IMG/VR virus record: IMGVR_UViG_3300024503_000485
Coordinates: 1-64,000 of that record
Length of the DNA stretch: 64,000 bases
Strand: one strand, 5' to 3'
The notes under the pieces: generated by a model
Databases searched by the model: none
Told to the model about the DNA's origin: nothing
What the model saw: only the letters and a program-made list of their open reading frames with translations
Shown here: in pieces, positions 514 to 61,576 of the stretch
Numbering within the stretch: position 1 is the first letter of the stretch
Layout: every line of letters starts with the position of its first letter
Position numbers and translations under genes: made by a program

Positions 514-1449
514 TTATGCTTCCTTAATGTTAGAAATATTTTTTAGTTTAAGCTCTTCCATTAGGTCCGTCAACCATCGTAATACCTTTACATTTGGTTT
601 ATAACCCAGTTCGGCTAATCTTGTAATATCTGCTTCTGTATTTGCTACTGCTCCAACACGTGGCGGAACAACTATTTGTCTATGACTAATAATGTCTGCC
701 AATTGTTTGATACTTACAGATTGGCCTGATCCTAAATTGAATACGTCTCCGTGTTCACCGTACTCTAGAACAATCATAAGACCTTTGATAACATCACTAA
801 CATGAACAAAGTCTCTGCGTTGATCACCACCGCCGTGTAACAACAACGGTTGATTGGTTTCCCAGGCAGAAATAAACTTTGGAATCACTAATGCGTTTTT
901 GCCAAAGTCCATAAAGTCTCCGTACATGGTAAAAGGTCTTATTATTATTAATTCTGTATCCCCAACAAGACTCTGCACGTGAAGTGCCCATTCTGCAGAC
1001 ATCTTGCTCACAGCATAAGGATTGGTTGGCATCAATTGGCTATCTTCTCGTTGTTTGATTGTACCGTTGTTTCCATACACTGAGCTAGAACTTATATAAA
1101 CAAATTTCCTTACACCCATAGTTTGGCATAAACTAAAAAATTTATGTGTTGCTGTTATGTTTACATTATAGTATTCAGCGTACTCATTCCAACTAGGATC
1201 AATCCTAGATCGATTGGCCATATGAACAACAACATCAACTTCTTTAAGATGTTCTTTTAAAACTGGAATATCTTCTGTTATATCGCAATAATGTATTTGA
1301 TTATTGTGCGACCACCCTTCTCGAACACTTTGGTCCCATAAGAACGGAGGTTTATCAATCAATACCGTTTCGTCAAACATTTGTTTTAAGAATGGGGTAG
1401 CATTGCGTCCAAGAAACCCATTTGCTCCAGTGATCATTAATTTGCTCAT
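514..1449 (-). CDS. NAD-dependent epimerase/dehydratase (extended SDR)
   Basis: TGANGFLG Rossmann motif, SSSSVYG, YAVSK (YxxxK). Confidence 0.9.
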   Translation of the reverse strand: MSKLMITGANGFLGRNATPFLKQMFDETVLIDKPPFLWDQSVREGWSHNNQIHYCDITEDIPVLKEHLKEVDVVVHMANRSRIDPSWNEYAEYYNVNITATHKFFSLCQTMGVRKFVYISSSSVYGNNGTIKQREDSQLMPTNPYAVSKMSAEWALHVQSLVGDTELIIIRPFTMYGDFMDFGKNALVIPKFISAWETNQPLLLHGGGDQRRDFVHVSDVIKGLMIVLEYGEHGDVFNLGSGQSVSIKQLADIISHRQIVVPPRVGAVANTEADITRLAELGYKPNVKVLRWLTDLMEELKLKNISNIKEA

Positions 1450-17418: not shown

Positions 17419-17419
17419 C

Positions 17420-27902: not shown

Positions 27903-27917
27903 GCTTACAATTGAGTT

Positions 27918-47444: not shown

Positions 47445-48612
47445 TATTCCTATCCTTTTGAACAGCTGGTTTTACATCGCTTAGATATAAAACACAATAG
47501 TGGTTATCAATCCACGTTTGAGACATATTGCTCATAGGAGGAAAAGATTTGTTCACTACTATAATACTAACATCGTCTTCTTCTTTAATCAACCACTTTG
47601 CAGGCTTTTTAAAGATTAGTAATCTACCTTCAGACAAATCTCCACCGAGACCCGAAGCTCTAACCCATTCGTTGAACTTTGGATCTTCGTCGTTCCTACT
47701 TCGAAAACAAATTTTTATTTCCTCTTTGCTAACTCCATTGTTAATGGCGGAGATAACAAACGACTCTAACCAACTTTTTAAATGATTATCTTCACTGACT
47801 ATTAAAATAACTTTTTTCTTTACGGTTTTATACAAATTAAAAAATTTACTAAAATCGTCGGTCCAAAAATAATTTGTATTATATGAGGCTACTCTATGAA
47901 TAAGATTTTTTGATGTAGACCCGTACAATACATAACCCATACGCTTTGCCAGCATTAGGTCGTGATCTAATTCTTTTAATTTTCTAGAATCAAAATACTC
48001 TTGTGCAGACGAAGTTGCGTTTTGTAATACTACTTCATCGTTTACAATTTTGCAGGCTGGAGCATAATACTCTGCGTCGTTCCAAATCTGTTCAACATCT
48101 GCTAGTGCATGATTAAATGATTCGTCAATATTAAATCCGTGTCTAATTGCAAATTCATTTACTAAAATTAAATTTAAATCGTAGATGTTATATTTTCTAA
48201 CTTTATCGTCTGGATTCCAAAGAGATCGATCTTCTCTGTTATTTTTAAGAACTTCTTTTTCAAAAACTTCTTTAAGAGAATAAGGATGTTTTAAGCATAA
48301 CCAAAGTTTATCATTTTTGTCTTTTTCAACAAAAATGCTTTTAGTCATATCTAAATTTCTAAAAGGATTTTTCCATGTTGCGTTTTGTAATCTAAAATTT
48401 AAATTTAATTGTCGTGTACTAAAATGATTTTTATATTTTTCCATTAACTTGATAACATAGTTTGCCTGCGCTTGGGTAAGATTTTTGTTATCTGCAATTA
48501 AATTGAAAAAATTTGTCAATACGACAATGTCCTGATTATTCAAGAAATTTGTAGATATAACCGAAGTATAAAATTCGGTAAAGATGTCTTCGAAATATTC
48601 ATTCGCCGCCAT
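47431..48612 (-). CDS. hypothetical protein
   Basis: 393-aa ORF overlapping uvsW start. Confidence 0.65.
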   Translation of the reverse strand: MAANEYFEDIFTEFYTSVISTNFLNNQDIVVLTNFFNLIADNKNLTQAQANYVIKLMEKYKNHFSTRQLNLNFRLQNATWKNPFRNLDMTKSIFVEKDKNDKLWLCLKHPYSLKEVFEKEVLKNNREDRSLWNPDDKVRKYNIYDLNLILVNEFAIRHGFNIDESFNHALADVEQIWNDAEYYAPACKIVNDEVVLQNATSSAQEYFDSRKLKELDHDLMLAKRMGYVLYGSTSKNLIHRVASYNTNYFWTDDFSKFFNLYKTVKKKVILIVSEDNHLKSWLESFVISAINNGVSKEEIKICFRSRNDEDPKFNEWVRASGLGGDLSEGRLLIFKKPAKWLIKEEDDVSIIVVNKSFPPMSNMSQTWIDNHYCVLYLSDVKPAVQKDRNIVDL

Positions 48613-48642
48613 AATAATATTATAGCAGAAATAATTTAAAAA

Positions 48643-49482
48643 TCAAGACTTTTGTAAAATATTTACTAACCTTTTTTGAGGAATTCCGTCAACCATTTCT
48701 GATAATAACCACTCGGTATGACAAAGTTTTTTGAACCAGTCGCTCCGTTCAGGAATAATTGGGTTTTCTATATTTTCAAAGTTATTAGAAAGTTCGCCTG
48801 CAAGACTTGTTTGATCGCAAATTACAGGTACACCGTTAATTGATGCTTTAACTGCTGGACCACTATTAAAATTTACTACACAATGATAATTATAATCTAT
48901 ATCAAAATCATCGTAGGTATTTGCCACTAATCTTGGATATTGTACCAACACATTTGGAGAATTTACAACTACAGGCGACCGTGGATGTGGCCTTACAACA
49001 ATTAACCTATCAGTATATTTTCTTATTTCTGCTACGGTATTTTTTACCCAAACAGACATAGACGGTTGACCAACCCACTGGAGGCTTTTTTCATGCTGAC
49101 TAGCAATTAGTATTTCTTTTCGTCGTAGTGTATTTTCTGGTTTTAATTGAATATTTAATTTTTGTGGTCGTGCTTCGTCAATCTCATCTTGATTTCCAAA
49201 TTCACCTAGGCCGTTAATATTATTTAAACTAACCCTCCACGTTAATCCTCTAACCAAATTTCCAACTTCAATAATCATCACAGGAATATTAGCTGCTTGG
49301 CATTGTTCGTAAACAGATTTATTACTAAACATTCTTCCATGCCAAAGTACGCTCCAGATAACAGCTACATCTTCTTCCTTATCGACAATAGTATGTCCTA
49401 ATTTTTTTAGTCCAAGTTCAAAGGCATCAAATACAGGCCCACTATTCATGGCTCCATACTTTCTATACAATTTAAATTTCAT
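48643..49482 (-). CDS. GT-B-like glycosyltransferase (KpsS/KpsC-like)
   Basis: VRPHPR, VNFNSGPAVKASINGVPV. Confidence 0.65.
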   Translation of the reverse strand: MKFKLYRKYGAMNSGPVFDAFELGLKKLGHTIVDKEEDVAVIWSVLWHGRMFSNKSVYEQCQAANIPVMIIEVGNLVRGLTWRVSLNNINGLGEFGNQDEIDEARPQKLNIQLKPENTLRRKEILIASQHEKSLQWVGQPSMSVWVKNTVAEIRKYTDRLIVVRPHPRSPVVVNSPNVLVQYPRLVANTYDDFDIDYNYHCVVNFNSGPAVKASINGVPVICDQTSLAGELSNNFENIENPIIPERSDWFKKLCHTEWLLSEMVDGIPQKRLVNILQKS

Positions 49483-49525
49483 AGTTTTTTGAATTATAAA
49501 TAACAGAGTATTTAATTCTAATTCA

Positions 49526-49942
49526 ATGAGTAAATTTGAAAAAACGTTAAGAAAGAAAGTAGGAAAGCCCCAAAATACTATTCTATTGGGATTAGGGCCT
49601 AGCGAGATTGAAACAGCATCAAACGTTTTTCAATCTGTATTTGTATTTTCTTCTATAGATCAGTCGTTTAAAAATAGAAACGTAATCTATTTTGAAAACT
49701 TTAACGATATGGCCAAATTACCGGAAGTAAATTTTATACTTATTAATCCTGAAAATATTAAAGAAATGCCAAATATTACACCAATATTAAAAAATTCAAA
49801 ACCGCTGGTTATGATACTTTCAGGGGAATATATACATAAACGTTTTTCAAAGTGGCTAATTGAAGAAATGCATTATGAACTAGTTGAACTCGACACTCAT
49901 CGTCAACTATGGAAAAAGAAACGATTATTAGGACAATTATGA
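49526..49942 (+). CDS. hypothetical protein
   Basis: Coupled to gmd. Confidence 0.6.
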   Translation: MSKFEKTLRKKVGKPQNTILLGLGPSEIETASNVFQSVFVFSSIDQSFKNRNVIYFENFNDMAKLPEVNFILINPENIKEMPNITPILKNSKPLVMILSGEYIHKRFSKWLIEEMHYELVELDTHRQLWKKKRLLGQL

Positions 49943-50919
49943 AAAAGACAGCATTTGTAACAGGAATGACAGGACAAGACGGTCCATATCTTGCTAAACT
50001 TCTTCTAGAAAAAGATTATAAAGTATATGGTCTTGTAAAAAGATATTCTAATCCAAATTTAGATAATATCAAATATTTAGGTATTGAAAACGACATTGAG
50101 TTGATCACCGGCGATATTACAGACGACGGATGTATCAACCATTTAGTTAAAAGTCTTAAACCAAATGAATTTTATAATCTTGCCGCTCAAAGTTTTGTAG
50201 GAGCAAGCTGGGACCTTAATAAATTAACCACTGAAGTTAATGCTGTTGGCCCTTTAAATAATCTTAATGCTATTAAGCAGCATAGTCCAGAAACAAAATA
50301 TTATCAAGCAAGCACTTCCGAAATGTACGGTAATAGCATTGAAATTTCCGGAGGACACCAAGACGAAACAACACCGTTCTGGCCCCGTAGTCCATACGGA
50401 GTTGCAAAATTATATGCTTACTGGATCACCGTAAATTTTAGAGAAAGTTACGGAATTCATGCTTCAAATGGAATATTGTTTAATCACGAAAGTCCTATTC
50501 GAGGTAAAGAATTTGTTACAAGAAAAATTACAGATGGCGTAGCAAAAATTAAATGTGGCCTTGCTGACAAAATTACTTTAGGTAATTTAGATTCTAGAAG
50601 AGACTGGGGTTTTGCCGGTGATTTTGTTGAAGCTATGTGGTTAATGTTACAACAAGACGAACCGGGCGATTATGTTATTGCCACAGGAGTTCAATACACT
50701 ATTGGTGATTTATTAGAACGTGCATTTAGATATGCAGGCATCGAAGACTGGGAAAAATATATTGAATCAGATCCAAGATTTAAGAGACCGGCAGAGCTTT
50801 ATAGCCTTTGTGGAAACCCCGCTAAAGCAGAAAATGTCCTTGGGTGGAAACGTAAAACTAGTTTTGACGATCTAGTTAAAATGATGGTTGAAGCAGATAT
50901 CAAACGTTATACTAAATGA
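49939..50919 (+). CDS. gmd: GDP-mannose 4,6-dehydratase
   Basis: TGMTGQDG.YLA, NLAAQSFV, QASTSEMYG, PRSPYGVAK, LFNHESP, RDWG. Confidence 0.95.
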   Translation: MKKTAFVTGMTGQDGPYLAKLLLEKDYKVYGLVKRYSNPNLDNIKYLGIENDIELITGDITDDGCINHLVKSLKPNEFYNLAAQSFVGASWDLNKLTTEVNAVGPLNNLNAIKQHSPETKYYQASTSEMYGNSIEISGGHQDETTPFWPRSPYGVAKLYAYWITVNFRESYGIHASNGILFNHESPIRGKEFVTRKITDGVAKIKCGLADKITLGNLDSRRDWGFAGDFVEAMWLMLQQDEPGDYVIATGVQYTIGDLLERAFRYAGIEDWEKYIESDPRFKRPAELYSLCGNPAKAENVLGWKRKTSFDDLVKMMVEADIKRYTK

Positions 50920-51740
50920 CAACAAAATTTGCAGTAGTCACTACTTTTCATCAGGCTGGGTACGAAAAATACGGTCGAAGGATGATTCAAACCTTTTTAG
51001 AATCATGGCCTAAAGATGTAACCTTATATGTGTATCCTGAGAATTGTGCAGTAATTGAAACTGCTCCAAACCTCGTTGTGAGAGATTTACACTCGTCAAG
51101 TCCCGAACTAGTTGCATTTAAAGAAAAGTGGAAAAATGACCCAAAAGCCAGAGGGGAAGTAGCCATGGGACCTCCTGGACCTAAGGGAAAGATTCCCGGA
51201 ATTGGTTTTCGTTGGGATGCTATTAGATTTAGTCATAAAATTTATTCGGTATGTCATGCGGCAGAAAATACCGATGCCGATATACTGCTTTGGATGGATG
51301 CTGACATGGTTTGCCATACCACACTTCCGGTGCATTTTTTAGAAAAAATGGCAGGTACTCATGTGGGTTTGGGATTTTTAGGTAGAGAAAATAAATTTAC
51401 CGAATGTGGATTATATTCGATGAATTTAAGAAATCCTGCTACTCAAGAATTTTTAAAAGAATTTCAAAAGGCCTACGACACTGGCAGAATTTTCACCATG
51501 AAAGAGTGGAATGATTGTTGGGTTTTTGACGTTGTTCGAGAAGAAATTAAAAAACTTCATCCTGACTGGTATTGGTACAACTGGAGTAAGGGATTAATCA
51601 AAGGAGAAGGCCATCCGCTGGTTAATAGTCCTTGGGGTGCTTATCTCGATCACCTTAAAGGTAACCGAAAAAATACCGGAAAAAGCCTAAAAACAGATTT
51701 TATTCGTCAGCGTACTGAAAAATATTGGATTACTCAGTAA
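50916..51740 (+). CDS. GT-A-like glycosyltransferase
   Basis: VVTTF, RFSHK, WMDAD, WNDC. Confidence 0.65.
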   Translation: MTTKFAVVTTFHQAGYEKYGRRMIQTFLESWPKDVTLYVYPENCAVIETAPNLVVRDLHSSSPELVAFKEKWKNDPKARGEVAMGPPGPKGKIPGIGFRWDAIRFSHKIYSVCHAAENTDADILLWMDADMVCHTTLPVHFLEKMAGTHVGLGFLGRENKFTECGLYSMNLRNPATQEFLKEFQKAYDTGRIFTMKEWNDCWVFDVVREEIKKLHPDWYWYNWSKGLIKGEGHPLVNSPWGAYLDHLKGNRKNTGKSLKTDFIRQRTEKYWITQ

Positions 51741-52449
51741 TTTGATATTCGTGTTTTGAATGCTTGGCTTTGTAATGATCTAAATATTCCCCAAGCACGG
51801 TATGCTTCATTGGAGTTTTGTAAGGCTTTTTAAAATCTTTGCATAAATCATTGCCTTTTGCTCCGATTTTTTCAAAAACATAACCATATACATCGTTATC
51901 GTAAAATCTTCTTAAATTTTTTGAATCTTGTTCAACAAAGTGTCTACGATACTCATTTCTAAAATTAAAAAAGTTTGGATGTTTTGTGTTTACAGCAGAA
52001 AAACCAGTCTCAGGAACAAACCATCTACCAGGAGTTCCGTCTTTAGCTGACAAATATGTAACTCCCATGTGAGTGCTAAGAACATTGTCAGGTAAAACTG
52101 ATTTTAACAAGTCTAAAGGAAGTTTTTTCTTTGTAATAACATCGGCGTCTAACCAAATAATTCGATCAGCATCGCTGTTAAACATTGCGTGTATAAAACT
52201 AAAAGATTTTTTAGCAAATTTTCTTTCTTGACCGCCTATACCTTTAGTATTTTGAAAAATTTCATATGCAGGGTCTAATTCTTTAAAGTCTATTTGTTTA
52301 ATTCGGTTTATGTTTGGTAATTGAAACTCTTCGACATAGCAAGTCAGTGTTAATTCTTCTGGCCAATATGTTAACCAAGACTCTACAGAGTCTCTTCCGA
52401 TGAGATTATAATAATATTCGTTGAAACTTGTTATAACTTCTATTTTCAT
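51730..52449 (-). CDS. GT-A-like glycosyltransferase (paralog)
   Basis: VITSF, KFAKK, IWLDAD, ETGF, YDND. Confidence 0.65.
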   Translation of the reverse strand: MKIEVITSFNEYYYNLIGRDSVESWLTYWPEELTLTCYVEEFQLPNINRIKQIDFKELDPAYEIFQNTKGIGGQERKFAKKSFSFIHAMFNSDADRIIWLDADVITKKKLPLDLLKSVLPDNVLSTHMGVTYLSAKDGTPGRWFVPETGFSAVNTKHPNFFNFRNEYRRHFVEQDSKNLRRFYDNDVYGYVFEKIGAKGNDLCKDFKKPYKTPMKHTVLGEYLDHYKAKHSKHEYQITE

Positions 52450-53384
52450 ACATACTTTCTCATATGAGACCAACATTCCCCGTTGGTAATTTCTTCAAAG
52501 TTCCAATGGAACATAGCCAACCGTTCTACCCATTTTTGTCTGTCTGGTAAATTAGGATTTTCAATGTCAGATAAATTCATATTTGAAATTTCTGCACACT
52601 GACTTTTTTCAGGATCGGTGACAAAAATAGGATATCCTTCAATTGCGGCTCCTACGGTTGGACTTGAATTATAATTTACCACAGCCCAGCAATTTTTTAA
52701 ATCATGTTCTAGTGTTGTGCCTGGTTGTGATAACCTAATATTGTTATTTTTGTGACCAAGTTTTTTTATCAAGTTTTGAGGACTTAAATAATCTTTTGAG
52801 CCTTTGTCACCTGGATGTGCTCTTAATACAATTTCTCTATCAGTGTATTTTCTAATCTCTTTTAAGGTTGCTGCGGTCCATTCTACCACATCATATCCAC
52901 CCATCGACCATCCGCCATTTCGTTGTAAACAAAATAAAATGTGATTTCCTGTAGTGCGATAGTCTTTTAAAGATAAATTTAAATTTTTAGAAAGAGTTAT
53001 CCAACGTTGAGGATCAATTTCTTTATCGCAATACTCTCCTGTATTAGGAAATATTCCGTTAAAACTATATCTTAAATAATGTTTAGGATTTGTATTATCT
53101 TTATATAAAAATAAATTACTATCTGCCAATAAAACTTTTTTATTTGCATTAAGTTGATAATCAATGATTTTTCTTCTAAATTCTAAATGTGCAGTTCCTT
53201 TAGATCCTGCATGAACCCATCCTATGCTCATACCTACGTCAGCAGGAACAACTCGCATGTCGGTCACAAGTTCAACTTCGTCACCGTATTTTTGAACCCC
53301 AGTGGCATATAATTTTAAAATTTCTCCTTTTTCAACATTTTTGTTGTTAGGAGGAATACAAGCTAGGTATGCTGCAAATTTCAT
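52446..53384 (-). CDS. GT-B-like glycosyltransferase (KpsS/KpsC-like)
   Basis: LRAHPG, VNYNSSPTVGAAIEGYP. Confidence 0.65.
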   Translation of the reverse strand: MKFAAYLACIPPNNKNVEKGEILKLYATGVQKYGDEVELVTDMRVVPADVGMSIGWVHAGSKGTAHLEFRRKIIDYQLNANKKVLLADSNLFLYKDNTNPKHYLRYSFNGIFPNTGEYCDKEIDPQRWITLSKNLNLSLKDYRTTGNHILFCLQRNGGWSMGGYDVVEWTAATLKEIRKYTDREIVLRAHPGDKGSKDYLSPQNLIKKLGHKNNNIRLSQPGTTLEHDLKNCWAVVNYNSSPTVGAAIEGYPIFVTDPEKSQCAEISNMNLSDIENPNLPDRQKWVERLAMFHWNFEEITNGECWSHMRKYV

Positions 53385-54808
53385 TTATTAGTATTTTTAA
53401 TTAAAAGTTCTTTATTTAGAATACCAATGTGATGATGAAAATATTCATTCAACGGGCTGTACTTAATGGAAAATTCATTTTTTCGTTCATCGGCGCCATT
53501 GAGTTGCCACTTATCTGCTGTATCGCAATAAGAACCAATTCCATATTTTCCTATTAAAGACCCTAGCATATGATTATCGTATATTTGCCTTTGTTGATAA
53601 ATTTGTCCATTATACCAACCAGTAGAATATTCTCTAATAAATGCCGGAAATGCTTCGTGTTTTGTATTAAACGCAACAATTCCAGTTTCTAAATCTAACC
53701 CCGTACCAGGAATTAATGTTGCACATACTCGAGCGCCGGGGCTCAGTAATTCTTTTGCTTTTGAGAAAGATAAGGGACGTTTAACAGAAATATCAGCGTC
53801 TAACCAAACTACAAGACCACCAAATTTTCTTGCTGCCCATACCTGTACACGACTCTTTTTCCAGAATCTATCTGCTTTAGTTCCTCCCATTGCTTCTTGA
53901 ACCCAAGGGTCCTGTGTATTAGCAACATCTTTCCAGAACATAAAATTTTTACCAAATCCTAGATCTACAGGTTTGTCATCCCAAACAAAAACAACATCGC
54001 CCGGTAATGTATTTCTCCAAGATGCAAGTGTAATACTACCTACTTCGTTAAAATAATCTCTAGAAAGACTAGTAACAAACGTCAATGGAGGACGAGGCTT
54101 AGAACCAAATTCTAATCCCAACTCATTAGCATAATCAATTAAGTATTGATACCATACATTTTTATATAAACAATCCATGTAATGGGGGAACCAAGGTCCG
54201 CCCTCAGTCCAGTGGTATGCAACAGGCTTTCCGTCTTTTGTTTCATCATTCCATCCGACAAGAAAATTATATTTTGTTGAAACAGAACCAATCTCGTGAT
54301 CCTGTAACCATTGGAACCTATGTAAAAATTGTCCTGTTTGAGAATTTACCACCTCTGGTGTTAATGCTCTGTTTGATGGATGCTCACAATTCCATAAAAT
54401 CATCGAACTCCAGTTCTTTCTTGGATACTGGGCCTGTTGTTTGTTGTCCATCTTTACGGTATTTGTTGGTTGATGATTATGTTGAACAACCATTACAGCA
54501 TATTTTGGATCTGCTTGAGCAAATAATTCTGATATGTTACCGTCCCAAACAAAATCACAATCGCAGAATAAAGCCCAACCTTTGTATTTTTGTAAAGATG
54601 GCACTAAAAATCTAGTAAATGTAAATTCGGTGCTTCCTAAAGAATCGACATCTCTTGTATATAGACCGTCTCGTCTTAATTGGTCCTGTTTTAAAGGCTT
54701 AACAATAGCATCAGGTGTATTTTTATAGATTGAAAATTCGCATACCTTATATGCAATATCTTCTCTAGAATCGTAACCGATATAAACAGGTAAAAAATCA
54801 AAATTCAT
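53381..54808 (-). CDS. two-domain glycosyltransferase (GT8-like plus GT-A paralog)
   Basis: YIGYDSRE, STEFTFTRF, FCDCD, YPRKNWSS, HWTEGGPW; second domain WLDAD...ETG. Confidence 0.75.
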   Translation of the reverse strand: MNFDFLPVYIGYDSREDIAYKVCEFSIYKNTPDAIVKPLKQDQLRRDGLYTRDVDSLGSTEFTFTRFLVPSLQKYKGWALFCDCDFVWDGNISELFAQADPKYAVMVVQHNHQPTNTVKMDNKQQAQYPRKNWSSMILWNCEHPSNRALTPEVVNSQTGQFLHRFQWLQDHEIGSVSTKYNFLVGWNDETKDGKPVAYHWTEGGPWFPHYMDCLYKNVWYQYLIDYANELGLEFGSKPRPPLTFVTSLSRDYFNEVGSITLASWRNTLPGDVVFVWDDKPVDLGFGKNFMFWKDVANTQDPWVQEAMGGTKADRFWKKSRVQVWAARKFGGLVVWLDADISVKRPLSFSKAKELLSPGARVCATLIPGTGLDLETGIVAFNTKHEAFPAFIREYSTGWYNGQIYQQRQIYDNHMLGSLIGKYGIGSYCDTADKWQLNGADERKNEFSIKYSPLNEYFHHHIGILNKELLIKNTNK

Positions 54809-55613
54809 TTAACATTCTCCAGGCTGCGCCATTTTTTAATTCATCAATGTGATATTGTCCGTAGGCTAAATGGCAAGCCCATGCATATACTTTATCTTTG
54901 TCGGGATAGTACGGAGTTTCGATTTGACTCAAATCTTGTGATGCAACAGGAGAAGCTGCATGTGTAGGTGCTAGCGTAAATGCAGGATATCCGTATAAAA
55001 TTGCTTCGGTTGCTGAATTTGAATTATATGTAACTAACGCATGAACATCGTCATCAAGTGCTTCTTTTAACGTATTTGTAAGTACACGATCTGTTCTGCT
55101 TTTAACTCGTTGGCGTACAACAATTTCTCTATCTGTATATTGTTTAAGAGTATAGATAGTATCGTTGATCCATTCTTCTAAATCAATATTATAAAACTTA
55201 CAAGGTTTTTCATCAGGGGCTGCAATAAGAATTTTTTTGCCGCCTTTTTTCCAATTGTGAATAGGAATTCCTAATTTTCTAAATCTATCGTCTGGCCTTT
55301 GAATTATAGTATTTCCGTGTTGTATATCGTTTTTAACAATCCTATGCCAATATTTCCAACCCATGGGATTTAATGCACTTTTTTGATTACCCATATATCC
55401 GGTATCCATAAAATAAAAATCTCTATTATCAAACCAACAACGTTGCATGATTTTTTTCTTAAGAATACCTCTAAGGACAATGGGGTCTCTGCTGTGCTCA
55501 TATATAAAATCATCTGTGTTTATCACTCGACCATTAGCGCCAAGTGCAAACATGTTGATATATTCATCTTGTCCGTCTTTACTAAGAAAGATCCAATTGG
55601 TCATCTGTTTCAT
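54798..55613 (-). CDS. GT-B-like glycosyltransferase (KpsS/KpsC-like)
   Basis: YFMDTGY, VTYNSNSATEAILYGYP. Confidence 0.65.
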   Translation of the reverse strand: MKQMTNWIFLSKDGQDEYINMFALGANGRVINTDDFIYEHSRDPIVLRGILKKKIMQRCWFDNRDFYFMDTGYMGNQKSALNPMGWKYWHRIVKNDIQHGNTIIQRPDDRFRKLGIPIHNWKKGGKKILIAAPDEKPCKFYNIDLEEWINDTIYTLKQYTDREIVVRQRVKSRTDRVLTNTLKEALDDDVHALVTYNSNSATEAILYGYPAFTLAPTHAASPVASQDLSQIETPYYPDKDKVYAWACHLAYGQYHIDELKNGAAWRMLNEF

Positions 55614-56371
55614 TGTCTTTCTATATCATCTTCAATGCATTGTTCACCGTATTGAATTTCAACAACTTTCACAGGAACATCAAACGGATTAGTAAGTTGA
55701 TGCCACTCGTTAACTGGTACTTTGTACTCAACGTGCTTTCTTAAATGAACGCTAGGCATAGCGTAACCGCTGTTCATTAGTCTGTTTACTTCTGCTTCAC
55801 CGTCGCTGACTATCCAGTATTCTGCTCTTAATTTATGTCGTTGCATACTTAATTTTTTTCCAGGATCAACGGTTAGTTCTTTTACTTTCATTCCTGGTAC
55901 TTCGTGCAAGACACGATAATATCCCCACGGACGTTCGGTCTTTGGTGCTTTCCATTCTTGTAAAATCCATGAGCTAGAATTCATCTTATGTTCGCCGCCA
56001 ACTCCAAATACAAATTCTAAATTATCGTCTTTAATATCCATTTCGGGAATATTAGCATTTGTTCTATCACCGCCGTTAGCAAATATAATTTTATCGTTGG
56101 GATAAATTTCACGAACTTTTCTAATAGCATCTTTAGCTGAACCGTCGTCGTCGTTAAAATTAATAACTCGAGATACATTTGTTAAAGCGCCTAATATGCT
56201 TGAACGTTCTTCCCAAGGCATAAATTCTTGACCTTTTTTTCTTCTTAACCATGCATCGGAATTTGCACCAACAACTAGAACATCACCTAATTTTTTAGCT
56301 TCATTAATATAAGCAATATGGCCAGAATGAATAGGATCAAATCCTCCAGTAACTAACACTATATTTTTCAT
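55610..56371 (-). CDS. cytidylyltransferase fused to a mannose-6-phosphate isomerase-type cupin
   Basis: TGGFDPIHSGH, FANGGDR; ERPWGYY, LSMQRH, VEIQYG...EDDIER. Confidence 0.85.
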   Translation of the reverse strand: MKNIVLVTGGFDPIHSGHIAYINEAKKLGDVLVVGANSDAWLRRKKGQEFMPWEERSSILGALTNVSRVINFNDDDGSAKDAIRKVREIYPNDKIIFANGGDRTNANIPEMDIKDDNLEFVFGVGGEHKMNSSSWILQEWKAPKTERPWGYYRVLHEVPGMKVKELTVDPGKKLSMQRHKLRAEYWIVSDGEAEVNRLMNSGYAMPSVHLRKHVEYKVPVNEWHQLTNPFDVPVKVVEIQYGEQCIEDDIERQ

Positions 56372-57552
56372 TTTAGTCCTTTCAAAATAGTTTCTAGTAA
56401 TAGTAAATCGTTGTCATTAACAAAATGATTGTTTCCAATATAAACACCAACATCGTGTAATATGTCGGCATTATGAGGGCTGTCTGTTTCAATATTATAT
56501 TTTTTTAAAAATGGATGTTTTAATAAATTTCCACTTACTACAGGCCGATATTCGATGCCGTGTTTTTTAAATTCGTCTAATAGTGTTATATATGTTTCTT
56601 TACTTTTACAAATAAAAGGAAAACAGAAACTACTATTAGTTTCATCTTCTTTAGGAAAAAAGAATTTATCAGGATATTGTTTAATAATTTTTAAATATTT
56701 TTTAAAATTTTCTTTACGGATATGAATCATGCTATCCAATCTTTTTAGTTGTGACATACCTAAAATTGCAGGTAACTCATGATTTCTAAAATTATATCCG
56801 TCTGTCATAAACAGAAAACTAGGAGGCAAGTTTGGATATTCATCTTGATATTTTTTAAAATATTCGGGAGATCCTTCTCTAGCTAGACCGTGACTTCTTT
56901 TTAATCTCATCAATTCATATAATTCTTGATTGTTTGTGGAAATCATTCCTCCCTCAACGGTAGTCATGTGATGGCCGAAATAAAAGCTAAAAGTTGCCCC
57001 TAAAGAATCTGAACCTCTTTTTTTGTTATTAGGATCGCAAACACCGTGTGATTCGCAAATGTCTTCTAGTATGAGCGCATCTGGAAATATTTCTTTGTAT
57101 TTTTCTATTTCAGCATCTAAGCCCAACAGATGTGTGACAAATATTATTTTAATGTCTTTATGTTTATTTTTTAATTTTTTTAACTTTTCAACATCGTAAC
57201 TAAAAGTTGATAAATCAATATCTGCAAAGATTGGTTTAAATCCAGTTTGAATTACTGGGGCAACGTTTGTGACCCATGTACACGCAGGAACTAAAACTTT
57301 ATCCCCGTCTTTAAAATTATATAACTCTTTAATAGCAGATAATAATAATAAATTTGCTGTGCTGCCAGACGAAACAAATAAAGAATATTTAGAACCTAAC
57401 CATTCATTCCACTGAGCCTCAAATAATTTTACTTTTTCTCCGTTAGTGAATTTTTTTGAAGTTAAAATGAACTTGATCATTTTAAATTTGTCTGGCCAAG
57501 TAATTGTATCTTTCATTAAAGGCCATTTTAGTATTGGTGGTTTATTGATCAT
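56368..57552 (-). CDS. colD: ColD-like GDP-4-keto-6-deoxymannose 3-dehydratase (DegT/DnrJ fold)
   Basis: SSGSTAN, LEDICESHG, FSFYFGHHMTTVEGG (His at the usual Schiff-base Lys), GYNFR, EYRPVVSGN. Confidence 0.75.
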   Translation of the reverse strand: MINKPPILKWPLMKDTITWPDKFKMIKFILTSKKFTNGEKVKLFEAQWNEWLGSKYSLFVSSGSTANLLLLSAIKELYNFKDGDKVLVPACTWVTNVAPVIQTGFKPIFADIDLSTFSYDVEKLKKLKNKHKDIKIIFVTHLLGLDAEIEKYKEIFPDALILEDICESHGVCDPNNKKRGSDSLGATFSFYFGHHMTTVEGGMISTNNQELYELMRLKRSHGLAREGSPEYFKKYQDEYPNLPPSFLFMTDGYNFRNHELPAILGMSQLKRLDSMIHIRKENFKKYLKIIKQYPDKFFFPKEDETNSSFCFPFICKSKETYITLLDEFKKHGIEYRPVVSGNLLKHPFLKKYNIETDSPHNADILHDVGVYIGNNHFVNDNDLLLLETILKGLK

Positions 57553-58270
57553 GGTAACAAATTGCCGTATGGTTTATATAAATTTCCGAGTAGCCGCGAA
57601 GATGAAATTCTTCGCAAATAATTGAAGTATCGCAATCAAATTTTTTAAATCTTTCATTAAACCAGCCGTACCGTGCACCGTCCTGAAATGGTTTTGCATC
57701 AAATAAGCATACTCCGTTACATGTTGAATAATATTTTCCAAAAGGAGTAATATCCCAATCTTTATGTAATTTTCCTCTGTCTTCGTCGGCGTGTCTTCGT
57801 GTAGCCCAAACATCATATAATTTTCCGTTTGTTCCTTTTGAAACCATTGATACAATATCAACTTTTGTTAAATTATATGTTTCTTGAAAATTTAAAATTT
57901 TTTCAACATCTTGTAGATCAAATCTCATATCGGATTCAATATCTAATATATGATCTACATTGTTAAGAAAATTTTTTGCTTCGATTGCTTTATTTCTTGC
58001 TGCTGCTAAATTTTTTACACGCTGTTCATCTTTAACAGAATGAAAAAATTCTGTTCCTATATTTTCGCAGATAATAGAAAAATCTTTAGCGAAGGACCAA
58101 TCTAAATTATTCAATTTAATTTTGGTATCATCAGTTGAATCGTTTTCATACAAAGAAATATAAAAATTATAATTAGGAAAATGCTCAACTATTGATTTTA
58201 TTTGAGAATAATATTGTTCTATTTTTTGACTAGAATTTCTAAAAATAGTGTATATCAAAATGTTTTTCAT
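57542..58270 (-). CDS. glycosyltransferase-like protein (GT-A)
   Basis: YENDSTDDT, LAAARNKA, YDVWA. Confidence 0.65.
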   Translation of the reverse strand: MKNILIYTIFRNSSQKIEQYYSQIKSIVEHFPNYNFYISLYENDSTDDTKIKLNNLDWSFAKDFSIICENIGTEFFHSVKDEQRVKNLAAARNKAIEAKNFLNNVDHILDIESDMRFDLQDVEKILNFQETYNLTKVDIVSMVSKGTNGKLYDVWATRRHADEDRGKLHKDWDITPFGKYYSTCNGVCLFDAKPFQDGARYGWFNERFKKFDCDTSIICEEFHLRGYSEIYINHTAICYHDQ

Positions 58271-58314
58271 GAACTATTTATAAAATAAATATTTGGCATT
58301 TTAAGGATTAGAAT

Positions 58315-58962
58315 ATGTGGGTATTAGCAAGTCGCGGAAGACCAAAGAACCTAAAACGGTTTATTAAATGCTGGAAAGAAACTAAAGGATCAACTCCAGT
58401 TTATATTAGATTAGATGAATGCGATCCAGAAATTGAAAATTATAAAAAATTAAATTATCCAAAAGAATTTCATGTTGTAATAGAATCTCGAGCCAGGTTA
58501 GGACGGGCAATGAACGAGATGGTTGAAAGGTATCCAAACGAACCGTGGTATGGATTACTAGCAGACGATTTAATCCCACAAACTCAAAATTGGGATCAAA
58601 AACTTGTAATTGCTGCTTCTAATAATTTTATATCTCAATGTAATGATTTAACAAGAAAGCCACAAAACTGCTGTCATCCTTGTATAGGGGGAGATTTGAT
58701 AAGAAAAATTGGATGGTTTGCTTTACCTGTATGCACCCATTATTGTGTTGAACTTCCTTGGAAAGAGCTTACTAAAAGAAATCCAGAAATTTTAAAATAT
58801 CTTTCAGATGTAGTTGTTGAACATGCGCATTATCGATTTGACAAAGCTGAATTGGACAACACATACAAAGAGTTAAAAACTTTAAAACATCCTGACCACG
58901 AAATTTGGGATCAATGGAAATTACAACATCTTGACGAATTTTGTATCAAGGCGTTGAGCTAA
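58315..58962 (+). CDS. GT2-like glycosyltransferase
   Basis: SRGRP, LADD, WDQKL, EHAH. Confidence 0.6.
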   Translation: MWVLASRGRPKNLKRFIKCWKETKGSTPVYIRLDECDPEIENYKKLNYPKEFHVVIESRARLGRAMNEMVERYPNEPWYGLLADDLIPQTQNWDQKLVIAASNNFISQCNDLTRKPQNCCHPCIGGDLIRKIGWFALPVCTHYCVELPWKELTKRNPEILKYLSDVVVEHAHYRFDKAELDNTYKELKTLKHPDHEIWDQWKLQHLDEFCIKALS

Positions 58963-59755
58963 AAAACAACTCAATATTTCTATCTTTATTATTGATGTTG
59001 TTAACTTGTTTTAATAATTCTAAATCAATTCCTAGACTAGACGCTTCTGTTTGAATAGCACTAATATCTTTTGGAAAGCATATGCCACCCCAACCAAATT
59101 TTCCATCTGGTCCGGGAACATTTAAATGTGTATAACCAATTCGATCATCATAAATGGTTAGATCTTTTAACGATTCAAAACTTACATTCTCTGCCTTTGC
59201 TAACTTATAAAATTCATTCATAAATGTTACCTTAGTGGCAAGGTACGCATTCATCATATACTTGTATAAGGCAGCAGACTTAATATCAGTAACTAAAAAT
59301 TGCCTGTGGACTAGAGGAACACCTGATCGAATAACATCTCTAGCAGTAACACATAATTCTCCGTTACCGCCTAGAATAAAATATCTACTATTTTGATAAT
59401 CGGCGCTAGCATTAGCCGCAGTTAAAAATTCTGGGCAATGAATTATTGAAGGATATTCTTTTAAAAGTTGATTGTATATGCTAGGAGTTGCTGTCGATTT
59501 GCATATTAACGGTATTTTTTCGCTAATGCCTGCATTATATAATTCTTTTAAAACCTGTTCAAGAATAGAGGCATCACAACTACCATTGTCTAAAGCTGGA
59601 GTTGGAACACAAATAAAGATTCCGTCGCAATCTAAGAATTTTTCATAGTCGGCACTATCTTCAAATTTTGGATCTCGAACTACTCTTTCATCATTACGAT
59701 GTGCCCAATAAATTGCTTCTCCAACAAAACCTAGACCAATAATTCCTATTTTCAT
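58946..59755 (-). CDS. UDP-glucose/GDP-mannose dehydrogenase family (lacks C-terminal domain)
   Basis: GLGFVG, CVPTP, KST, PEFL, GWGGICFPKD. Confidence 0.85.
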   Translation of the reverse strand: MKIGIIGLGFVGEAIYWAHRNDERVVRDPKFEDSADYEKFLDCDGIFICVPTPALDNGSCDASILEQVLKELYNAGISEKIPLICKSTATPSIYNQLLKEYPSIIHCPEFLTAANASADYQNSRYFILGGNGELCVTARDVIRSGVPLVHRQFLVTDIKSAALYKYMMNAYLATKVTFMNEFYKLAKAENVSFESLKDLTIYDDRIGYTHLNVPGPDGKFGWGGICFPKDISAIQTEASSLGIDLELLKQVNNINNKDRNIELFFSSTP

Positions 59756-60207: not shown

Positions 60208-60441
60208 TTAATCCTCATCTTCGTAATATTCATCTTCTTCTTCGATCTCTTCGCCATCAATAGCATATTCAATAGCTGTGTCTAAATATGGATCTACGCC
60301 TAGTAGACTATCTAAAACACTTTCTTTAATACCATAATCTAACAATGTGTTAACAAAGTCAGCGGCAACGTCTTTGCGTTGTTTTTCAGGAATATGCTCT
60401 ACAACAATTGACCATAAATCTGCAATTAAATCTTCTTTCAT
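60208..60441 (-). CDS. small acidic protein
   Basis: Between uvsX and uvsY. Confidence 0.65.
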   Translation of the reverse strand: MKEDLIADLWSIVVEHIPEKQRKDVAADFVNTLLDYGIKESVLDSLLGVDPYLDTAIEYAIDGEEIEEEDEYYEDED

Positions 60442-61517: not shown

Positions 61518-61541
61518 ATTATGTTCCCTGTAGTGGTAAGA

Positions 61542-61564
61542 GAGTGCGGGTATTGCCCACACTC
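61542..61564 (-). terminator. hairpin between gp32 and uvsX
   Basis: GAGTGTGGG-CAATA-CCCGCACTC followed by TCTT. Confidence 0.6.
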
Positions 61565-61576
61565 TTTACTTTATTA

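What the first reader, a model, noticed from the sequence alone, without database searches (positions are those of the whole stretch)
49939..57552. Phage-encoded route toward the 3,6-dideoxysugar GDP-colitose
Seen: Gmd plus a PLP enzyme with FSFYFGHHMTTVEGG and no Cys-rich Fe-S insert, plus a PMI-type cupin. Established: His replacing the Schiff-base Lys marks 3-dehydratases; ColD lacks the E1 [2Fe-2S] motif and acts on the Gmd product, and ColC completes colitose. No clear ColC is in the island; the SDR at 514-1449 is only a weak candidate. Inference: the phage makes a rare O-antigen-type deoxysugar for virion, DNA or host-surface decoration.
Basis: partly seen in the sequence, partly recalled or inferred. 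Interest (0 to 1): 0.65.

Follow-up and report, generated by a model that had tools for sequence, protein, structure and literature searches.

The report
Phage dideoxysugar genes lacking last step
An uncultured river jumbo phage carries the first two committed enzymes for a rare 3,6-dideoxy sugar inside a large operon of sugar-adding enzymes, but it lacks the usual third enzyme, so colitose as the end product is not shown.

Summary
Window 49939-50919(+) encodes a GDP-mannose 4,6-dehydratase (Gmd). Window 56368-57552(-) encodes a ColD-type PLP/PMP 3-dehydratase: the catalytic His replaces the Schiff-base Lys, there is no Fe-S motif, and the best solved relative is E. coli ColD (6e-64).

The window is the first 64 kb of a 219-kb, 62%-complete T4-like jumbo phage from river metagenomes. 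No ColC/Fcl homolog exists in that record or in a 98%-complete, 353-kb syntenic relative. The SDR at 514-1449 resembles UDP-glucuronate 4-epimerases, not ColC. About 23 other viral ColD clades, including cyanophages ACG-2014f and S-CAM7, carry the canonical gmd-colC-colD triad, so this lineage is the exception.

Here ColD plus a GT69-like transferase (and Gmd) is an accessory cassette. It sits in a conserved uvsX-to-uvsW operon of soluble glycosyltransferases, three of them KpsC/WbbB-like.

Best reading: the phage makes GDP-4-keto-3,6-dideoxy-D-mannose and adds a derived 3,6-dideoxyhexose to a phage-built glycan. The final stereochemistry and the acceptor are unresolved.

The parts
49939..50919 (+). 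GDP-mannose 4,6-dehydratase (Gmd), short P. aeruginosa-like type. The longest ORF starts at 49909.
   Evidence: PF16363 7.7e-116; TIGR01472 404 bits (cut-off 415); PDB 1rpn 5.8e-125. 88% identical in the syntenic relative L017/L018.
56368..57552 (-). ColD-type PLP/PMP-dependent GDP-4-keto-6-deoxy-D-mannose 3-dehydratase
   Evidence: PF01041 1.4e-59. PDB ColD 2gms 6.1e-64 against 1.7e-33 for the next family. His occupies the His188 column, and there is no Cys-rich stretch. The HH motif is kept in all 31 distinct viral homologs.
57542..58270 (-). GT69-like (CAP59/Cmt1 mannosyltransferase family) glycosyltransferase, translationally coupled to ColD. It is the likely transferase for the GDP-linked deoxysugar.
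   Evidence: PF11735 1.2e-12, 48.4 bits (cut-off 28.8). Its stop overlaps the ColD start by 11 nt. It is found only in loci that also have ColD: 4 of 80 loci, plus L014 and L017-21.
55610..56371 (-). Fusion of an HldE-domain-II-like nucleotidyltransferase (residues 1-140) with a type II phosphomannose isomerase cupin (residues 144-252). It is the proposed supplier of the activated manno-sugar.
   Evidence: PF01467 6.5e-12; TIGR02199 4.7e-20; PF01050 8.6e-24. PDB HldC 5x9q 5e-10. The model has pLDDT 91.5, and its cupin matches T. kodakarensis PMI 7zvy at TM 0.85. It belongs to a virus-only family.
54798..55613 (-). Family B glycosyltransferase paralog (KpsC/WbbB-like GT-B)
   Evidence: 24% identical to the 312-aa paralog, 1.5e-16. 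Present in 48 of 80 related loci.
53381..54808 (-). Two-domain glycosyltransferase: an N-terminal GT8-like domain (DxD motif CDCDF) and a C-terminal family A GT-A-like domain (WLDADI)
   Evidence: phrog_28018 3.7e-52; weak PF01501 hit at 0.0016. The C-terminal half is 25% identical to the 248-aa protein. Present in 51 of 80 loci.
52446..53384 (-). Family B glycosyltransferase, structurally closest to retaining beta-Kdo transferases
   Evidence: AF2 model pLDDT 93.2. Foldseek KpsC 8fuw 4.5e-8. VIA Z is 14.2 to 12.1 for KpsC/WbbB/KrkA, against 10 or less for generic GT-B enzymes such as TarM, BshA and the Gtf family (the next non-Kdo rows, Asp1, score 11.3 to 10.4). The Atlas shows a virus-only family with weak PF05159 signal.
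51730..52476 (-). Family A GT-A-like glycosyltransferase (DxD motif WLDADV)
   Evidence: 25% identical to the 274-aa paralog, 1e-19; weak PF01501 hit at 0.011.
50916..51740 (+). Family A GT-A-like glycosyltransferase (DxD motif WMDADM), co-transcribed with Gmd
   Evidence: Paralog of the 248-aa protein; weak PF00535 hit at 0.03. 74% identical in the relative.
48643..49482 (-). Third family B (KpsC/WbbB-like) paralog, at the uvsW-proximal edge of the module
   Evidence: 34% identical to the 312-aa paralog, 2e-19. Present in 31 of 80 loci.
58315..58962 (+). Small glycosyltransferase in the variable cassette
   Evidence: phrog_14945 glycosyltransferase 2.3e-31. 58% identical in L014.
58946..59755 (-). 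Short UDP-glucose/GDP-mannose-dehydrogenase-family protein. It has the Rossmann motif and the catalytic GGICFPKD, but no C-terminal nucleotide-sugar domain.
   Evidence: PF00984 7.9e-20; PF03721 4.8e-13. PDB 3gg2 5e-20 and AlgD 1mfz 1e-17. It is conserved at 257-276 aa in eight relatives.
514..1449 (-). It is UDP-glucuronate/UDP-hexose 4-epimerase-like, not ColC.
   Evidence: PDB MoeE5 6kv9 2.7e-34 and 6zl6 2.1e-27. The Fcl model NF047922 gives 49 bits over a partial stretch (cut-off 500). 24% identical to the ACG-2014f ColC-like protein, against 30.5% to that phage's GalE/TviC-like epimerase.

Best explanation
The finding sits inside a tightly packed operon of soluble sugar-nucleotide enzymes and glycosyltransferases. 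The operon runs from about 48.6 to 60.2 kb, between uvsW and uvsX, in an uncultured T4-like jumbo phage from rivers.

Shown by homology:
- Gmd converts GDP-mannose to GDP-4-keto-6-deoxy-D-mannose.
- The ColD-type enzyme then removes the 3-OH, using PMP, the catalytic His and glutamate to recycle the cofactor. No Fe-S partner is needed. The product is GDP-4-keto-3,6-dideoxy-D-mannose.

Inferred:
- The GT69-like transferase coupled to ColD adds the resulting 3,6-dideoxyhexose to a glycan.
- The rest of that glycan is built by the conserved core. The core consists of the nucleotidyltransferase-PMI fusion, three KpsC/WbbB-like GT-B paralogs, three to four GT-A domains and a GT8-like domain.
- Gmd, ColD and the GT69-like gene form an accessory cassette that diversifies this lineage-wide glycan.

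The C4 reduction, with or without C5 epimerisation, is not done by a canonical phage ColC. The sugar is therefore a 3,6-dideoxyhexose of unresolved configuration: colitose only if a host enzyme or an unseen enzyme completes it. The acceptor is unresolved. A host envelope glycoconjugate and virion proteins are about equally likely, and DNA is unlikely.
For: Enzyme identities rest.

Operon coupling: successive minus-strand genes from 60207 to 51730 overlap by 4 to 31 nt.

ColD clade:
- About 23 of 31 distinct viral homologs sit in gmd-colC(Fcl-like)-colD triads, so the clade is a genuine GDP-sugar 3-dehydratase clade.
- The triad is present in cyanophage ACG-2014f. Its Gmd scores 559 bits, its Fcl-like protein scores 420 bits and 1.9e-91 to E. 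coli Fcl, and its ColD-like protein is 56% identical to ours.
- The ColD proteins without ColC (ours, L014, L017, L015) group together with 92/86 support.

Absence of ColC:
- None was found in the record or in the 98%-complete relative G001.
- Searches for other reductase or epimerase families were negative.

Core versus accessory, among 80 loci that carry the fusion: o475 in 51, o271 in 48, o312 in 46, gmd in 9, colD in 4, cap59 in 4. The core always lies between uvsX and uvsW.

Other points:
- Family B has the fold of retaining Kdo transferases.
- No island protein has a transmembrane segment.
- Six river metatranscriptome runs hold 11 to 61% of the sampled words of 49900-57600.
Against: - No activity has been measured.
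- The record is only 62% complete, so a ColC could lie in the missing part. The 98%-complete relative lacks one too, but it carries an extra generic island SDR that this phage does not have.
- C. jejuni ColD homologs that are 62-67% identical to E. coli ColD act on a GDP-heptose (PMC10440746). Family membership therefore does not fix the hexose substrate.
- The donor and acceptor of every glycosyltransferase are inferred from fold or family only.
- The nucleotide specificity of the fusion's transferase domain is unknown, and no phosphomannomutase is encoded.
- A 4-keto sugar with no reductase would be an unusual donor.
Confidence: 0.6

Rival explanations
1. A true GDP-L-colitose pathway. Gmd and ColD are phage-encoded. 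The C5-epimerase/C4-reductase ColC comes from the host (its own ColC, or a promiscuous Fcl) or from the roughly 38% of the genome that was not assembled.
For: - The ColD clade is otherwise tied to Fcl-like ColC genes in about 23 viral lineages.
- The record is 62% complete.
- Fcl is common in bacteria: the Fcl model matches all 14 control genomes and exceeds its cut-off in 3.
Against: - The 98%-complete, fully syntenic relative also has no Fcl-type gene. Its best score is 45 bits against a cut-off of 500.
- Three sublineages (ours, L014, L017) keep ColD without ColC. That looks like a stable state, not an assembly gap.
- No evidence is available here that Fcl accepts the 3-deoxy substrate.
Confidence: 0.25
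2. A ColC-independent ending. The phage Gmd is bifunctional, like the P. aeruginosa and chlorovirus GMDs, and reduces the 4-keto group of the ColD product with NAD(P)H. This would give a D-series sugar, GDP-3,6-dideoxy-D-arabino-hexose (tyvelose-type), and not L-colitose. Alternatively, the short Ugd-like protein or another unrecognised enzyme does the reduction.
For: - The closest solved relative of the phage Gmd is P. aeruginosa GMD 1rpn, at 5.8e-125. That enzyme is reported to convert GDP-mannose all the way to GDP-D-rhamnose (PMC3584063).
- C. jejuni work shows that swapping C4-reductases after the 3-dehydratase yields different 3,6-dideoxy stereoisomers (PMC10440746).
- This route would explain the stable absence of ColC.
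Against: - Bifunctionality cannot be read from sequence, and B. cenocepacia BceN, E. coli and H. pylori GMDs are monofunctional.
- No GMD has been shown to reduce a 3-deoxy substrate.
- This is pure inference.
Confidence: 0.2
3. The pair acts on a GDP-heptose, not on GDP-mannose, and makes a 3,6-dideoxyheptose as in C. jejuni HS:5. In this reading the HldE-II-like/cupin fusion supplies an activated manno-heptose.
For: - ColD homologs of C. jejuni dehydrate GDP-6-deoxy-4-keto-heptose.
- The fusion's N-terminal domain is closest to heptose-1-phosphate adenylyltransferases: TIGR02199 at 4.7e-20 and HldC 5x9q.
- Sedoheptulose-7-P isomerisation is the C7 analogue of the PMI reaction (own knowledge).
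Against: - HldE-II-type enzymes make ADP-beta-heptose, which a Gmd-type enzyme would not be expected to use.
- No HddC-type (NTP_transferase-fold) guanylyltransferase gene was found, and no heptose kinase or phosphatase gene was recognised in the island; those families were not searched for specifically.
- The cupin matches the PMI family over its curated cut-off.
- The Gmd is closest to true GMDs.
Confidence: 0.06
4. The PLP enzyme is a 4-aminotransferase that makes GDP-perosamine, or it is an inactive relic.
For: It has the DegT/DnrJ/EryC1 fold. The H188K variant of ColD is a solved relative, 2r0t.
Against: - The Schiff-base Lys is replaced by His in this protein and in all 31 viral homologs.
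- Perosamine synthases score only 7e-23, against 6e-64 for ColD.
- The gene is conserved at 51-68% identity across lineages and sits inside a coupled operon.
Confidence: 0.03
5. The glycan module hypermodifies phage DNA, as T4 glucosylation or glycosylated 5hmC does.
For: - The module lies within the replication/recombination gene block (uvsW, uvsX, gp32).
- T4's beta-glucosyltransferase gene also lies next to uvsX (own knowledge).
- Phage glycosyltransferases that put diverse glycans on DNA are known (Pyle et al. 2024, cited in PMC12619734).
Against: - Neither this record nor the 98%-complete relative has a ThyA-type hydroxymethylase, a Tet/JBP oxygenase or a C5 DNA methyltransferase. No known route to a hydroxylated base is therefore present.
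- Nine glycosyltransferase domains are far more than any known DNA sugar modification needs.
Confidence: 0.06

Closest known systems
E. coli O55:H7 / Y. pseudotuberculosis ColD (GDP-4-keto-6-deoxy-D-mannose 3-dehydratase; PDB 2gms, 3gr9)
   Same: Same fold and a similar length (394 against 390 residues). The catalytic His replaces Lys, the PLP-binding motifs are shared, there is no Fe-S cluster, and the gene is linked to a Gmd.
   Different: Only moderately similar in sequence (219.6 bits, 6e-64; percent identity was not computed). It is phage-encoded, has no ColC partner, and is coupled to a GT69-like transferase inside an operon of soluble glycosyltransferases, not an O-antigen cluster with Wzx/Wzy.
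gmd-colC-colD triads of cyanophages ACG-2014f and S-CAM7 and of about 23 IMG/VR viral lineages
   Same: Closest homologs of the ColD-like protein (51-68% identical). They are phage-borne and flanked by glycosyltransferases.
   Different: Those phages carry an Fcl-like ColC directly beside ColD (420 bits on the Fcl model). This lineage does not. Records annotate these ColD genes only as 'aminotransferase', 'hypothetical protein' or 'CDP-4-keto-6-deoxy-D-glucose-3-dehydrase'. No paper on them was found.
C. jejuni HS:5/HS:11 GDP-3,6-dideoxyheptose pathway
   Same: A Gmd-type 4,6-dehydratase followed by a ColD-type PLP C3-dehydratase. The ending is modular, so different reductases give different stereoisomers.
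   Different: It uses a GDP-heptose and a separate cupin C5-epimerase and C4-reductase. Neither is recognisable here.
Bifunctional type II PMI-GMP enzymes (ManC, AlgA, WbpW)
   Same: An N-terminal nucleotidyltransferase and a C-terminal PMI cupin with the same metal-binding signature.
   Different: The nucleotidyltransferase has the unrelated HIGH-motif cytidylyltransferase fold (HldE domain II/TagD type), not the NTP_transferase fold. The fusion is virus-specific. In cultured cyanophages the two parts are separate genes (PMC9602691).
Retaining beta-Kdo transferases KpsC, KpsS, WbbB and KrkA (GT107/GT99)
   Same: They are the best structural matches of the three family B paralogs (Z 12-14, 246-256 residues aligned). 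A conserved RxHP motif and an NSS...G.EG.P nucleotide-domain motif are present.
   Different: Only 10-16% identical. The catalytic Asp of the QxxxD motif is not evident. Donor and acceptor are unknown.
Virus-encoded glycan machineries (chlorovirus GMD/GMER plus capsid glycosyltransferases; mycobacteriophage virion glycosylation)
   Same: Soluble viral glycosyltransferases combined with the virus's own GDP-sugar modification enzymes (PMC5408694, and Freeman 2023 as cited).
   Different: No dideoxyhexose branch or Kdo-transferase-like enzymes are reported there. The acceptor here is unknown.

Membership tests
ColD (GDP-4-keto-6-deoxy-D-mannose 3-dehydratase) | DegT/DnrJ/EryC1 (fold type I aminotransferase) scaffold | tested here: met
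   PF01041 1.4e-59 over residues 22-367.
ColD (GDP-4-keto-6-deoxy-D-mannose 3-dehydratase) | Catalytic His in place of the PLP Schiff-base Lys | tested here: met
   H194 aligns with ColD His188. The same column reads N in 3b8x and K in 2r0t. The motif is conserved in 31 viral homologs.
ColD (GDP-4-keto-6-deoxy-D-mannose 3-dehydratase) | No [2Fe-2S] Cys motif, so no E3-type reductase is needed | tested here: met
   No Cys between residues 173 and 309. The protein is 394 aa, against 437 aa for E1.
ColD (GDP-4-keto-6-deoxy-D-mannose 3-dehydratase) | Closer to characterised ColD than to E1, SpnQ-type enzymes or aminotransferases | tested here: met
   219.6 bits to ColD, against 119 (9wvy), 116 (E1) and 84 (perosamine synthase). 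The RfbH model gives 177 bits, below its cut-off of 423.
ColD (GDP-4-keto-6-deoxy-D-mannose 3-dehydratase) | Acts on the GDP-linked Gmd product (3-deoxygenation with glutamate) | not testable with these tools
   The only support is gene linkage with Gmd here and in 23 or more viral triads. C. jejuni homologs use a heptose.
GDP-L-colitose pathway (Gmd-ColD-ColC) | Gmd present | tested here: met
GDP-L-colitose pathway (Gmd-ColD-ColC) | ColC (Fcl-like C5-epimerase/C4-reductase) present | tested here: not met
   Only two PF01370 genes exist in the 219-kb record: Gmd and the 514-1449 SDR. The best Fcl-model score is 48 bits, against a cut-off of 500. The same holds in the 98%-complete relative. Caveat: the record is 62% complete.
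GDP-L-colitose pathway (Gmd-ColD-ColC) | GDP-mannose supply (ManB/ManC) | tested here: inconclusive
   There is no NTP_transferase-fold gene. A PMI cupin fused to a different nucleotidyltransferase fold is present, but its specificity is unknown.
GDP-mannose 4,6-dehydratase (TIGR01472) | Score over the curated equivalog cut-off | tested here: inconclusive
   404.4 bits against a cut-off of 415. However, PF16363 matches full length at 7.7e-116, and 1rpn matches at 5.8e-125.
E1 (CDP-6-deoxy-L-threo-D-glycero-4-hexulose 3-dehydrase, RfbH/DdhC) | Four-Cys [2Fe-2S] motif around the catalytic His | tested here: not met
   Three of the four positions are not Cys. NF011936 gives 177.6 bits, below its cut-off of 423.
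Type II phosphomannose isomerase | PF01050 cupin with the Q/H/E...H metal signature | tested here: met
   84.4 bits against a cut-off of 23.6. The SMQRHKLRAEYW and EWHQL motifs are present. The structural match to PMI 7zvy has TM 0.85. Activity was not tested.
Retaining beta-Kdo transferases (GT99/GT107) | GT-B-like fold with an HP motif and a catalytic Asp nucleophile | tested here: inconclusive
   Fold match at Z 12-14, and the RxHP motif is nearly invariant. No convincing equivalent of the QxxxD Asp was identified.

The most novel reading that the evidence does not exclude
A large lineage of aquatic T4-like jumbo phages carries a virus-specific cytoplasmic glycan factory between uvsX and uvsW. 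It consists of a nucleotidyltransferase-PMI fusion, three Kdo-transferase-like GT-B paralogs and a set of GT-A enzymes. In this phage, a Gmd/ColD/GT69 cassette adds a ColC-independent 3,6-dideoxyhexose, a D-series tyvelose-like sugar or even the 4-keto sugar itself. The result would be an LPS-like glycan displayed on virions or on infected cells.
Probability: 0.2. Interest if true: 0.75.

Novelty: new variant of a known kind. Interest (0 to 1): 0.5.

Why it matters
3,6-Dideoxyhexoses are known as immunodominant O-antigen sugars of a few Gram-negative bacteria. Finding their committed enzymes in many phage lineages means viruses make these sugars themselves. These lineages include published cyanophage genomes where the genes are annotated only generically.

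This jumbo-phage lineage adds two points:
- A stable ColD-without-ColC arrangement implies either an alternative final step or a different dideoxysugar.
- ColD is embedded in a conserved, virus-specific operon of soluble glycosyltransferases whose product and target are unknown.

That operon is a tractable entry point to phage-made glycans and their possible roles: virion shielding, superinfection exclusion or receptor masking. The nucleotidyltransferase-PMI fusion also gives a functional link between two widespread but unexplained cyanophage auxiliary genes.

Tried and rejected
- **Megablast:** the island gave no match against cultured phages.
- **Single-sequence IMG/VR scan:** it returned only identical copies. 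An alignment-based scan was needed.
- **SDR at 514-1449 as ColC:** rejected.
- **Other reductase or epimerase families** in the record (adh_short, RmlC-type, GFO/IDH): none found. NTP_transferase: none.
- **Island SDR of the relative** (L018:6159-7124): a generic UDP-hexose epimerase/decarboxylase type, not Fcl, and absent from this phage.
- **DNA-glycosylation prerequisites** (ThyA-like, Tet_JBP, C5-MTase): none in this record or the 98%-complete relative.
- **Read laying on 51650-57600:** Afterwards no letters of that stretch, and no ColD protein, were sent to any search tool. Transcription therefore rests only on word shares in six RNA runs, and DNA carry-over is not excluded.
- **ColD structure paper** PMC2533848: not held. 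GDP-contact residues were therefore not checked against the literature.
- **'Moraphage' jumbo-phage paper** (PMC12619734): it reports core glycosyltransferases, but nothing ties that lineage to this one.
- **Whole-model Foldseek match of the fusion to CapF** (Rossmann plus cupin): rmsd is about 16 Å. It reflects domain arrangement only and was not used.
- **CDP-6-fructose-type activation** as a model for the fusion: the C. jejuni enzyme is an IspD-fold protein (PF01128), so it is only a conceptual precedent.
- **Big protein searches:** not used, because the family scans and locus scans settled the identities.

Full report
**Setting**

The window is bases 1-64000 of an IMG/VR virus record of 219,444 bases. 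The record is linear, and CheckV estimates it at 62% complete.

- It encodes T4-type replication and recombination genes: a gp41-like helicase (37555-39000), a primase (40648-41676), a UvsW-like helicase (45990-47444), UvsX (60438-61562) and a gp32-like protein (61577-62557).
- The nearest cultured relatives of the helicase are jumbo phages such as PA5oct and Atu_ph07, at about 50% identity.
- The same DNA occurs in at least 14 river metagenome runs. Six river metatranscriptome runs hold 11-61% of the sampled words of 49900-57600.

It is therefore an uncultured freshwater jumbo phage, and the island is probably transcribed in nature.

**The observation**

- *Gmd (49939-50919, +).* It matches PF16363 at 7.7e-116 and P. 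aeruginosa GMD 1rpn at 5.8e-125. It falls 11 bits under the strict TIGR01472 cut-off.
- *The PLP enzyme (56368-57552, -).* It carries FSFYFGHHMTTVEGG. Its best solved relatives are the four E. coli ColD entries, at 6e-64 to 1e-62. The next family scores 1.7e-33, E1 scores 1.9e-32 and perosamine synthase scores 7e-23.
- *The catalytic His.* In the printed alignments, the first His of the HH pair occupies the column that is N in the H188N entry and K in the H188K entry. It is therefore the catalytic His. The review PMC8987622 confirms that this Lys-to-His change defines sugar 3-dehydratases, and that ColD lacks the [2Fe-2S] cluster of E1 and SpnQ.
- *No Fe-S motif.* The protein has no Cys between residues 173 and 309.
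- *The cupin (55610-56371, -).* It matches the type II PMI family over the cut-off and carries the metal signature. It is only the C-terminal half of a fusion. The N-terminal 140 residues form a HIGH-motif nucleotidyltransferase closest to heptose-1-phosphate adenylyltransferases (HldE domain II, HldC 5x9q).

**Is the pathway complete?**

No.

- The record holds only two extended-SDR genes: Gmd and the gene at 514-1449.
- The gene at 514-1449 resembles UDP-glucuronate 4-epimerases (MoeE5 at 2.7e-34). It scores 49 bits on the Fcl model (cut-off 500). It is closer to a GalE/TviC-like cyanophage epimerase (30.5%) than to a phage ColC-like protein (24%).
- The Fcl model finds nothing else. There are also no classical SDR, RmlC-type, GFO/IDH or NTP_transferase-fold genes.

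Because the record is incomplete, I looked for relatives.

- An alignment-based scan of IMG/VR gave 54 loci with ColD-like genes at 51-68% identity.
- One locus lies on a 353-kb contig that is 98% complete and syntenic across the whole island. Its Gmd is 88% identical, its ColD 68%, its fusion 74-82% and its glycosyltransferases 58-74%.
- That genome also has no Fcl-type gene. Its best score is 45 bits.
- It does carry one extra generic SDR in the island. This phage has a short Ugd-like gene and a small glycosyltransferase at that position instead.

**What the relatives say about ColD**

- Of 31 distinct viral ColD-like proteins, all keep the HH motif.
- About 23 of them sit in a gmd / Fcl-like / colD triad. 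These include the published cyanophages ACG-2014f and S-CAM7.

The clade is thus a genuine GDP-sugar 3-dehydratase clade, and complete colitose-type operons already exist in sequenced phages. They are annotated only as 'aminotransferase', 'nucleotide-sugar epimerase' or 'CDP-4-keto-6-deoxy-D-glucose-3-dehydrase'. I found no paper that discusses them.

The ColD proteins without ColC (this phage, L014, L017 and L015) group together with 92/86 support among the triad-linked ones. Other small clades pair ColD with unrelated SDRs (L026/27/56 and L028). The ending of the pathway therefore appears to be modular. This matches what was shown biochemically for C. jejuni 3,6-dideoxyheptoses, where different C4-reductases give different stereoisomers (PMC10440746).

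**The surroundings**

From 60207 down to 51730, the minus-strand genes overlap each other by 4 to 31 nt. In order they are the short Ugd-like protein, the GT69-like transferase, ColD, the fusion and four glycosyltransferase genes. Gmd and one more glycosyltransferase converge on this block from the plus strand.

Pairwise comparison shows two paralog families.

- *Family A* comprises the 274-aa protein, the 248-aa protein and the C-terminal half of the 475-aa protein. These have DxD motifs and weak GT2/GT8 signals.
- *Family B* comprises the 279-, 312- and 271-aa proteins.

A high-confidence model of the 312-aa protein (pLDDT 93) is closest to the retaining beta-Kdo transferases KpsC, WbbB and KrkA. 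Foldseek gives 4.5e-8, and VIA gives Z 12-14 over about 250 residues. Generic GT-B enzymes such as TarM and BshA score Z of 10 or less, and the Asp1 rows in between reach 11.3. The Atlas shows family B to be a virus-only family.

No island protein has a hydrophobic segment, and no multi-pass membrane protein of the Wzx/Wzy type is in the record.

**Core and accessory parts**

The nucleotidyltransferase-PMI fusion is a large virus-specific family.

- Atlas clusters reach 1,223 members, 97% of them viral.
- At least 565 IMG/VR hits are 60-87% identical over the full length.
- It does not occur as a fusion in cultured phages. There the two halves are separate genes: the transferase is 57% identical in P-TIM68 and sits between the DNA polymerase gene and uvsX, and the MPI cupin is known from S-SCSM1.

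In 80 loci carrying the fusion, the order is recurrent: gp32, uvsX, a 151-aa protein, a variable cassette, the fusion, family B and A glycosyltransferases, then uvsW.

| Gene | Loci out of 80 |
|---|---|
| 475-aa type | 51 |
| 271-aa type | 48 |
| 312-aa type | 46 |
| Gmd | 9 |
| ColD | 4 |
| GT69-like | 4 |

The GT69-like gene occurs only where ColD occurs. Gmd, ColD and the GT69-like transferase are therefore an accessory cassette grafted onto a conserved glycan-building core. GT69 enzymes use GDP-mannose, which fits a GDP-linked manno-derived donor.

**Mechanism**

Shown by homology: GDP-mannose goes to GDP-4-keto-6-deoxy-D-mannose through Gmd, and then to GDP-4-keto-3,6-dideoxy-D-mannose through ColD, with glutamate recycling PMP.

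Inferred:

- The fusion helps supply the activated manno-sugar. It would cover the first and last steps, with the host supplying the mutase.
- The GT69-like enzyme transfers the final deoxysugar.
- The core glycosyltransferases build the rest of the glycan.

Unknown: the C4 reduction, with or without C5 epimerisation. The options are:

- a host or unseen ColC, which gives colitose;
- reduction by a bifunctional Gmd, which gives a D-series tyvelose-type sugar. The nearest solved relative, P. aeruginosa GMD, is reported to be bifunctional (PMC3584063);
- another unrecognised enzyme.

**Acceptor**

DNA is the least likely acceptor. Neither this record nor the 98%-complete relative encodes a ThyA-type hydroxymethylase, a Tet/JBP oxygenase or a C5 methyltransferase.

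The enzymology is of the LPS or capsule type: Kdo-transferase-like, GT8-like, HldE-like and a dideoxyhexose. That fits modification of a host envelope glycoconjugate at the cytoplasmic face. An all-soluble, lineage-conserved enzyme set also fits virion protein glycosylation, as in chloroviruses and mycobacteriophages. I cannot separate these two.

**Limits**

- No activity was measured.
Nothing was laid, and nothing from those places was sent to a search tool afterwards.
- GDP-contact residues could not be checked, because the structural paper is not held.

**Verdict**

The finding is a new variant of a known kind: a ColD-type deoxysugar branch without ColC, embedded in a conserved phage glycan operon. 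Interest is moderate.

Noticed in passing
window 55610-56371 (-); loci L061-L140: The HIGH-motif nucleotidyltransferase/PMI-cupin fusion is a very large virus-only family (at least 565 IMG/VR contigs, 60-87% identical). It joins two genes that occur separately, and without a known role, in cultured cyanophages. This is a Rosetta-stone hint that the cyanophage 'cytidylyltransferase' and 'MPI' auxiliary genes work in one pathway.
   Followed up: partly
window about 47431-62557; L061-L140: A conserved gene order recurs in dozens of viral contigs up to 353 kb: gp32, uvsX, a 151-aa protein, a variable sugar cassette, the fusion, KpsC-like and GT-A glycosyltransferases, then uvsW. This looks like a lineage-wide glycan module inside the replication block.
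   Followed up: partly
window 58946-59755 (-): A short UDP-glucose/GDP-mannose-dehydrogenase-family protein. It has the Rossmann motif and the catalytic GGICFPKD but lacks the C-terminal nucleotide-sugar domain. It is conserved at 257-276 aa in at least eight related contigs, so it is not a broken gene.
   Followed up: partly
L001 (NC_047714.1 153629-156746); also S-CAM7: The published cyanophages ACG-2014f and S-CAM7 carry a complete gmd / Fcl-like colC / colD triad followed by glycosyltransferases, a methyltransferase and a sulfotransferase. The triad genes are annotated only generically.
   Followed up: partly
L026, L027, L056, L057; L028-L031: These ColD-like genes (57-60% identical) lack a true Gmd nearby; the best 4,6-dehydratase hit is 24-27% identical. 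Instead of an Fcl-like ColC they have unrelated SDRs adjacent. They may represent other dideoxysugar routes in phages.
   Followed up: no
window 38997-40554 (-): A 2OG-Fe(II) oxygenase and a carbamoyltransferase-N-domain protein lie between the replicative helicase and the primase. Cyanophages show the same oxygenase placement (P-TIM68) and a cupin next to a carbamoyltransferase (S-SCSM1).
   Followed up: no
window 12000-32000: G+C is 0.45-0.48 here, against 0.31-0.40 in the rest of the window. The region contains tRNA-Arg(TCT) and tRNA-Met at 16632-16790, a CobS-like ATPase (21983-23068), an HNH endonuclease (23226-24434) and many short ORFs.
   Followed up: partly
window 1-2651: A ClpP protease gene is cut by the record's end (1-513, -). 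An HNH nuclease with similarity to the IscB/Cas9 HNH domain lies at 1525-2064 (+), and a TIGR02466-family protein lies at 2061-2651 (+).
   Followed up: no
The tool itself says the filter also trips by chance and is no evidence of anything. The stretch was left alone afterwards.
   Followed up: no
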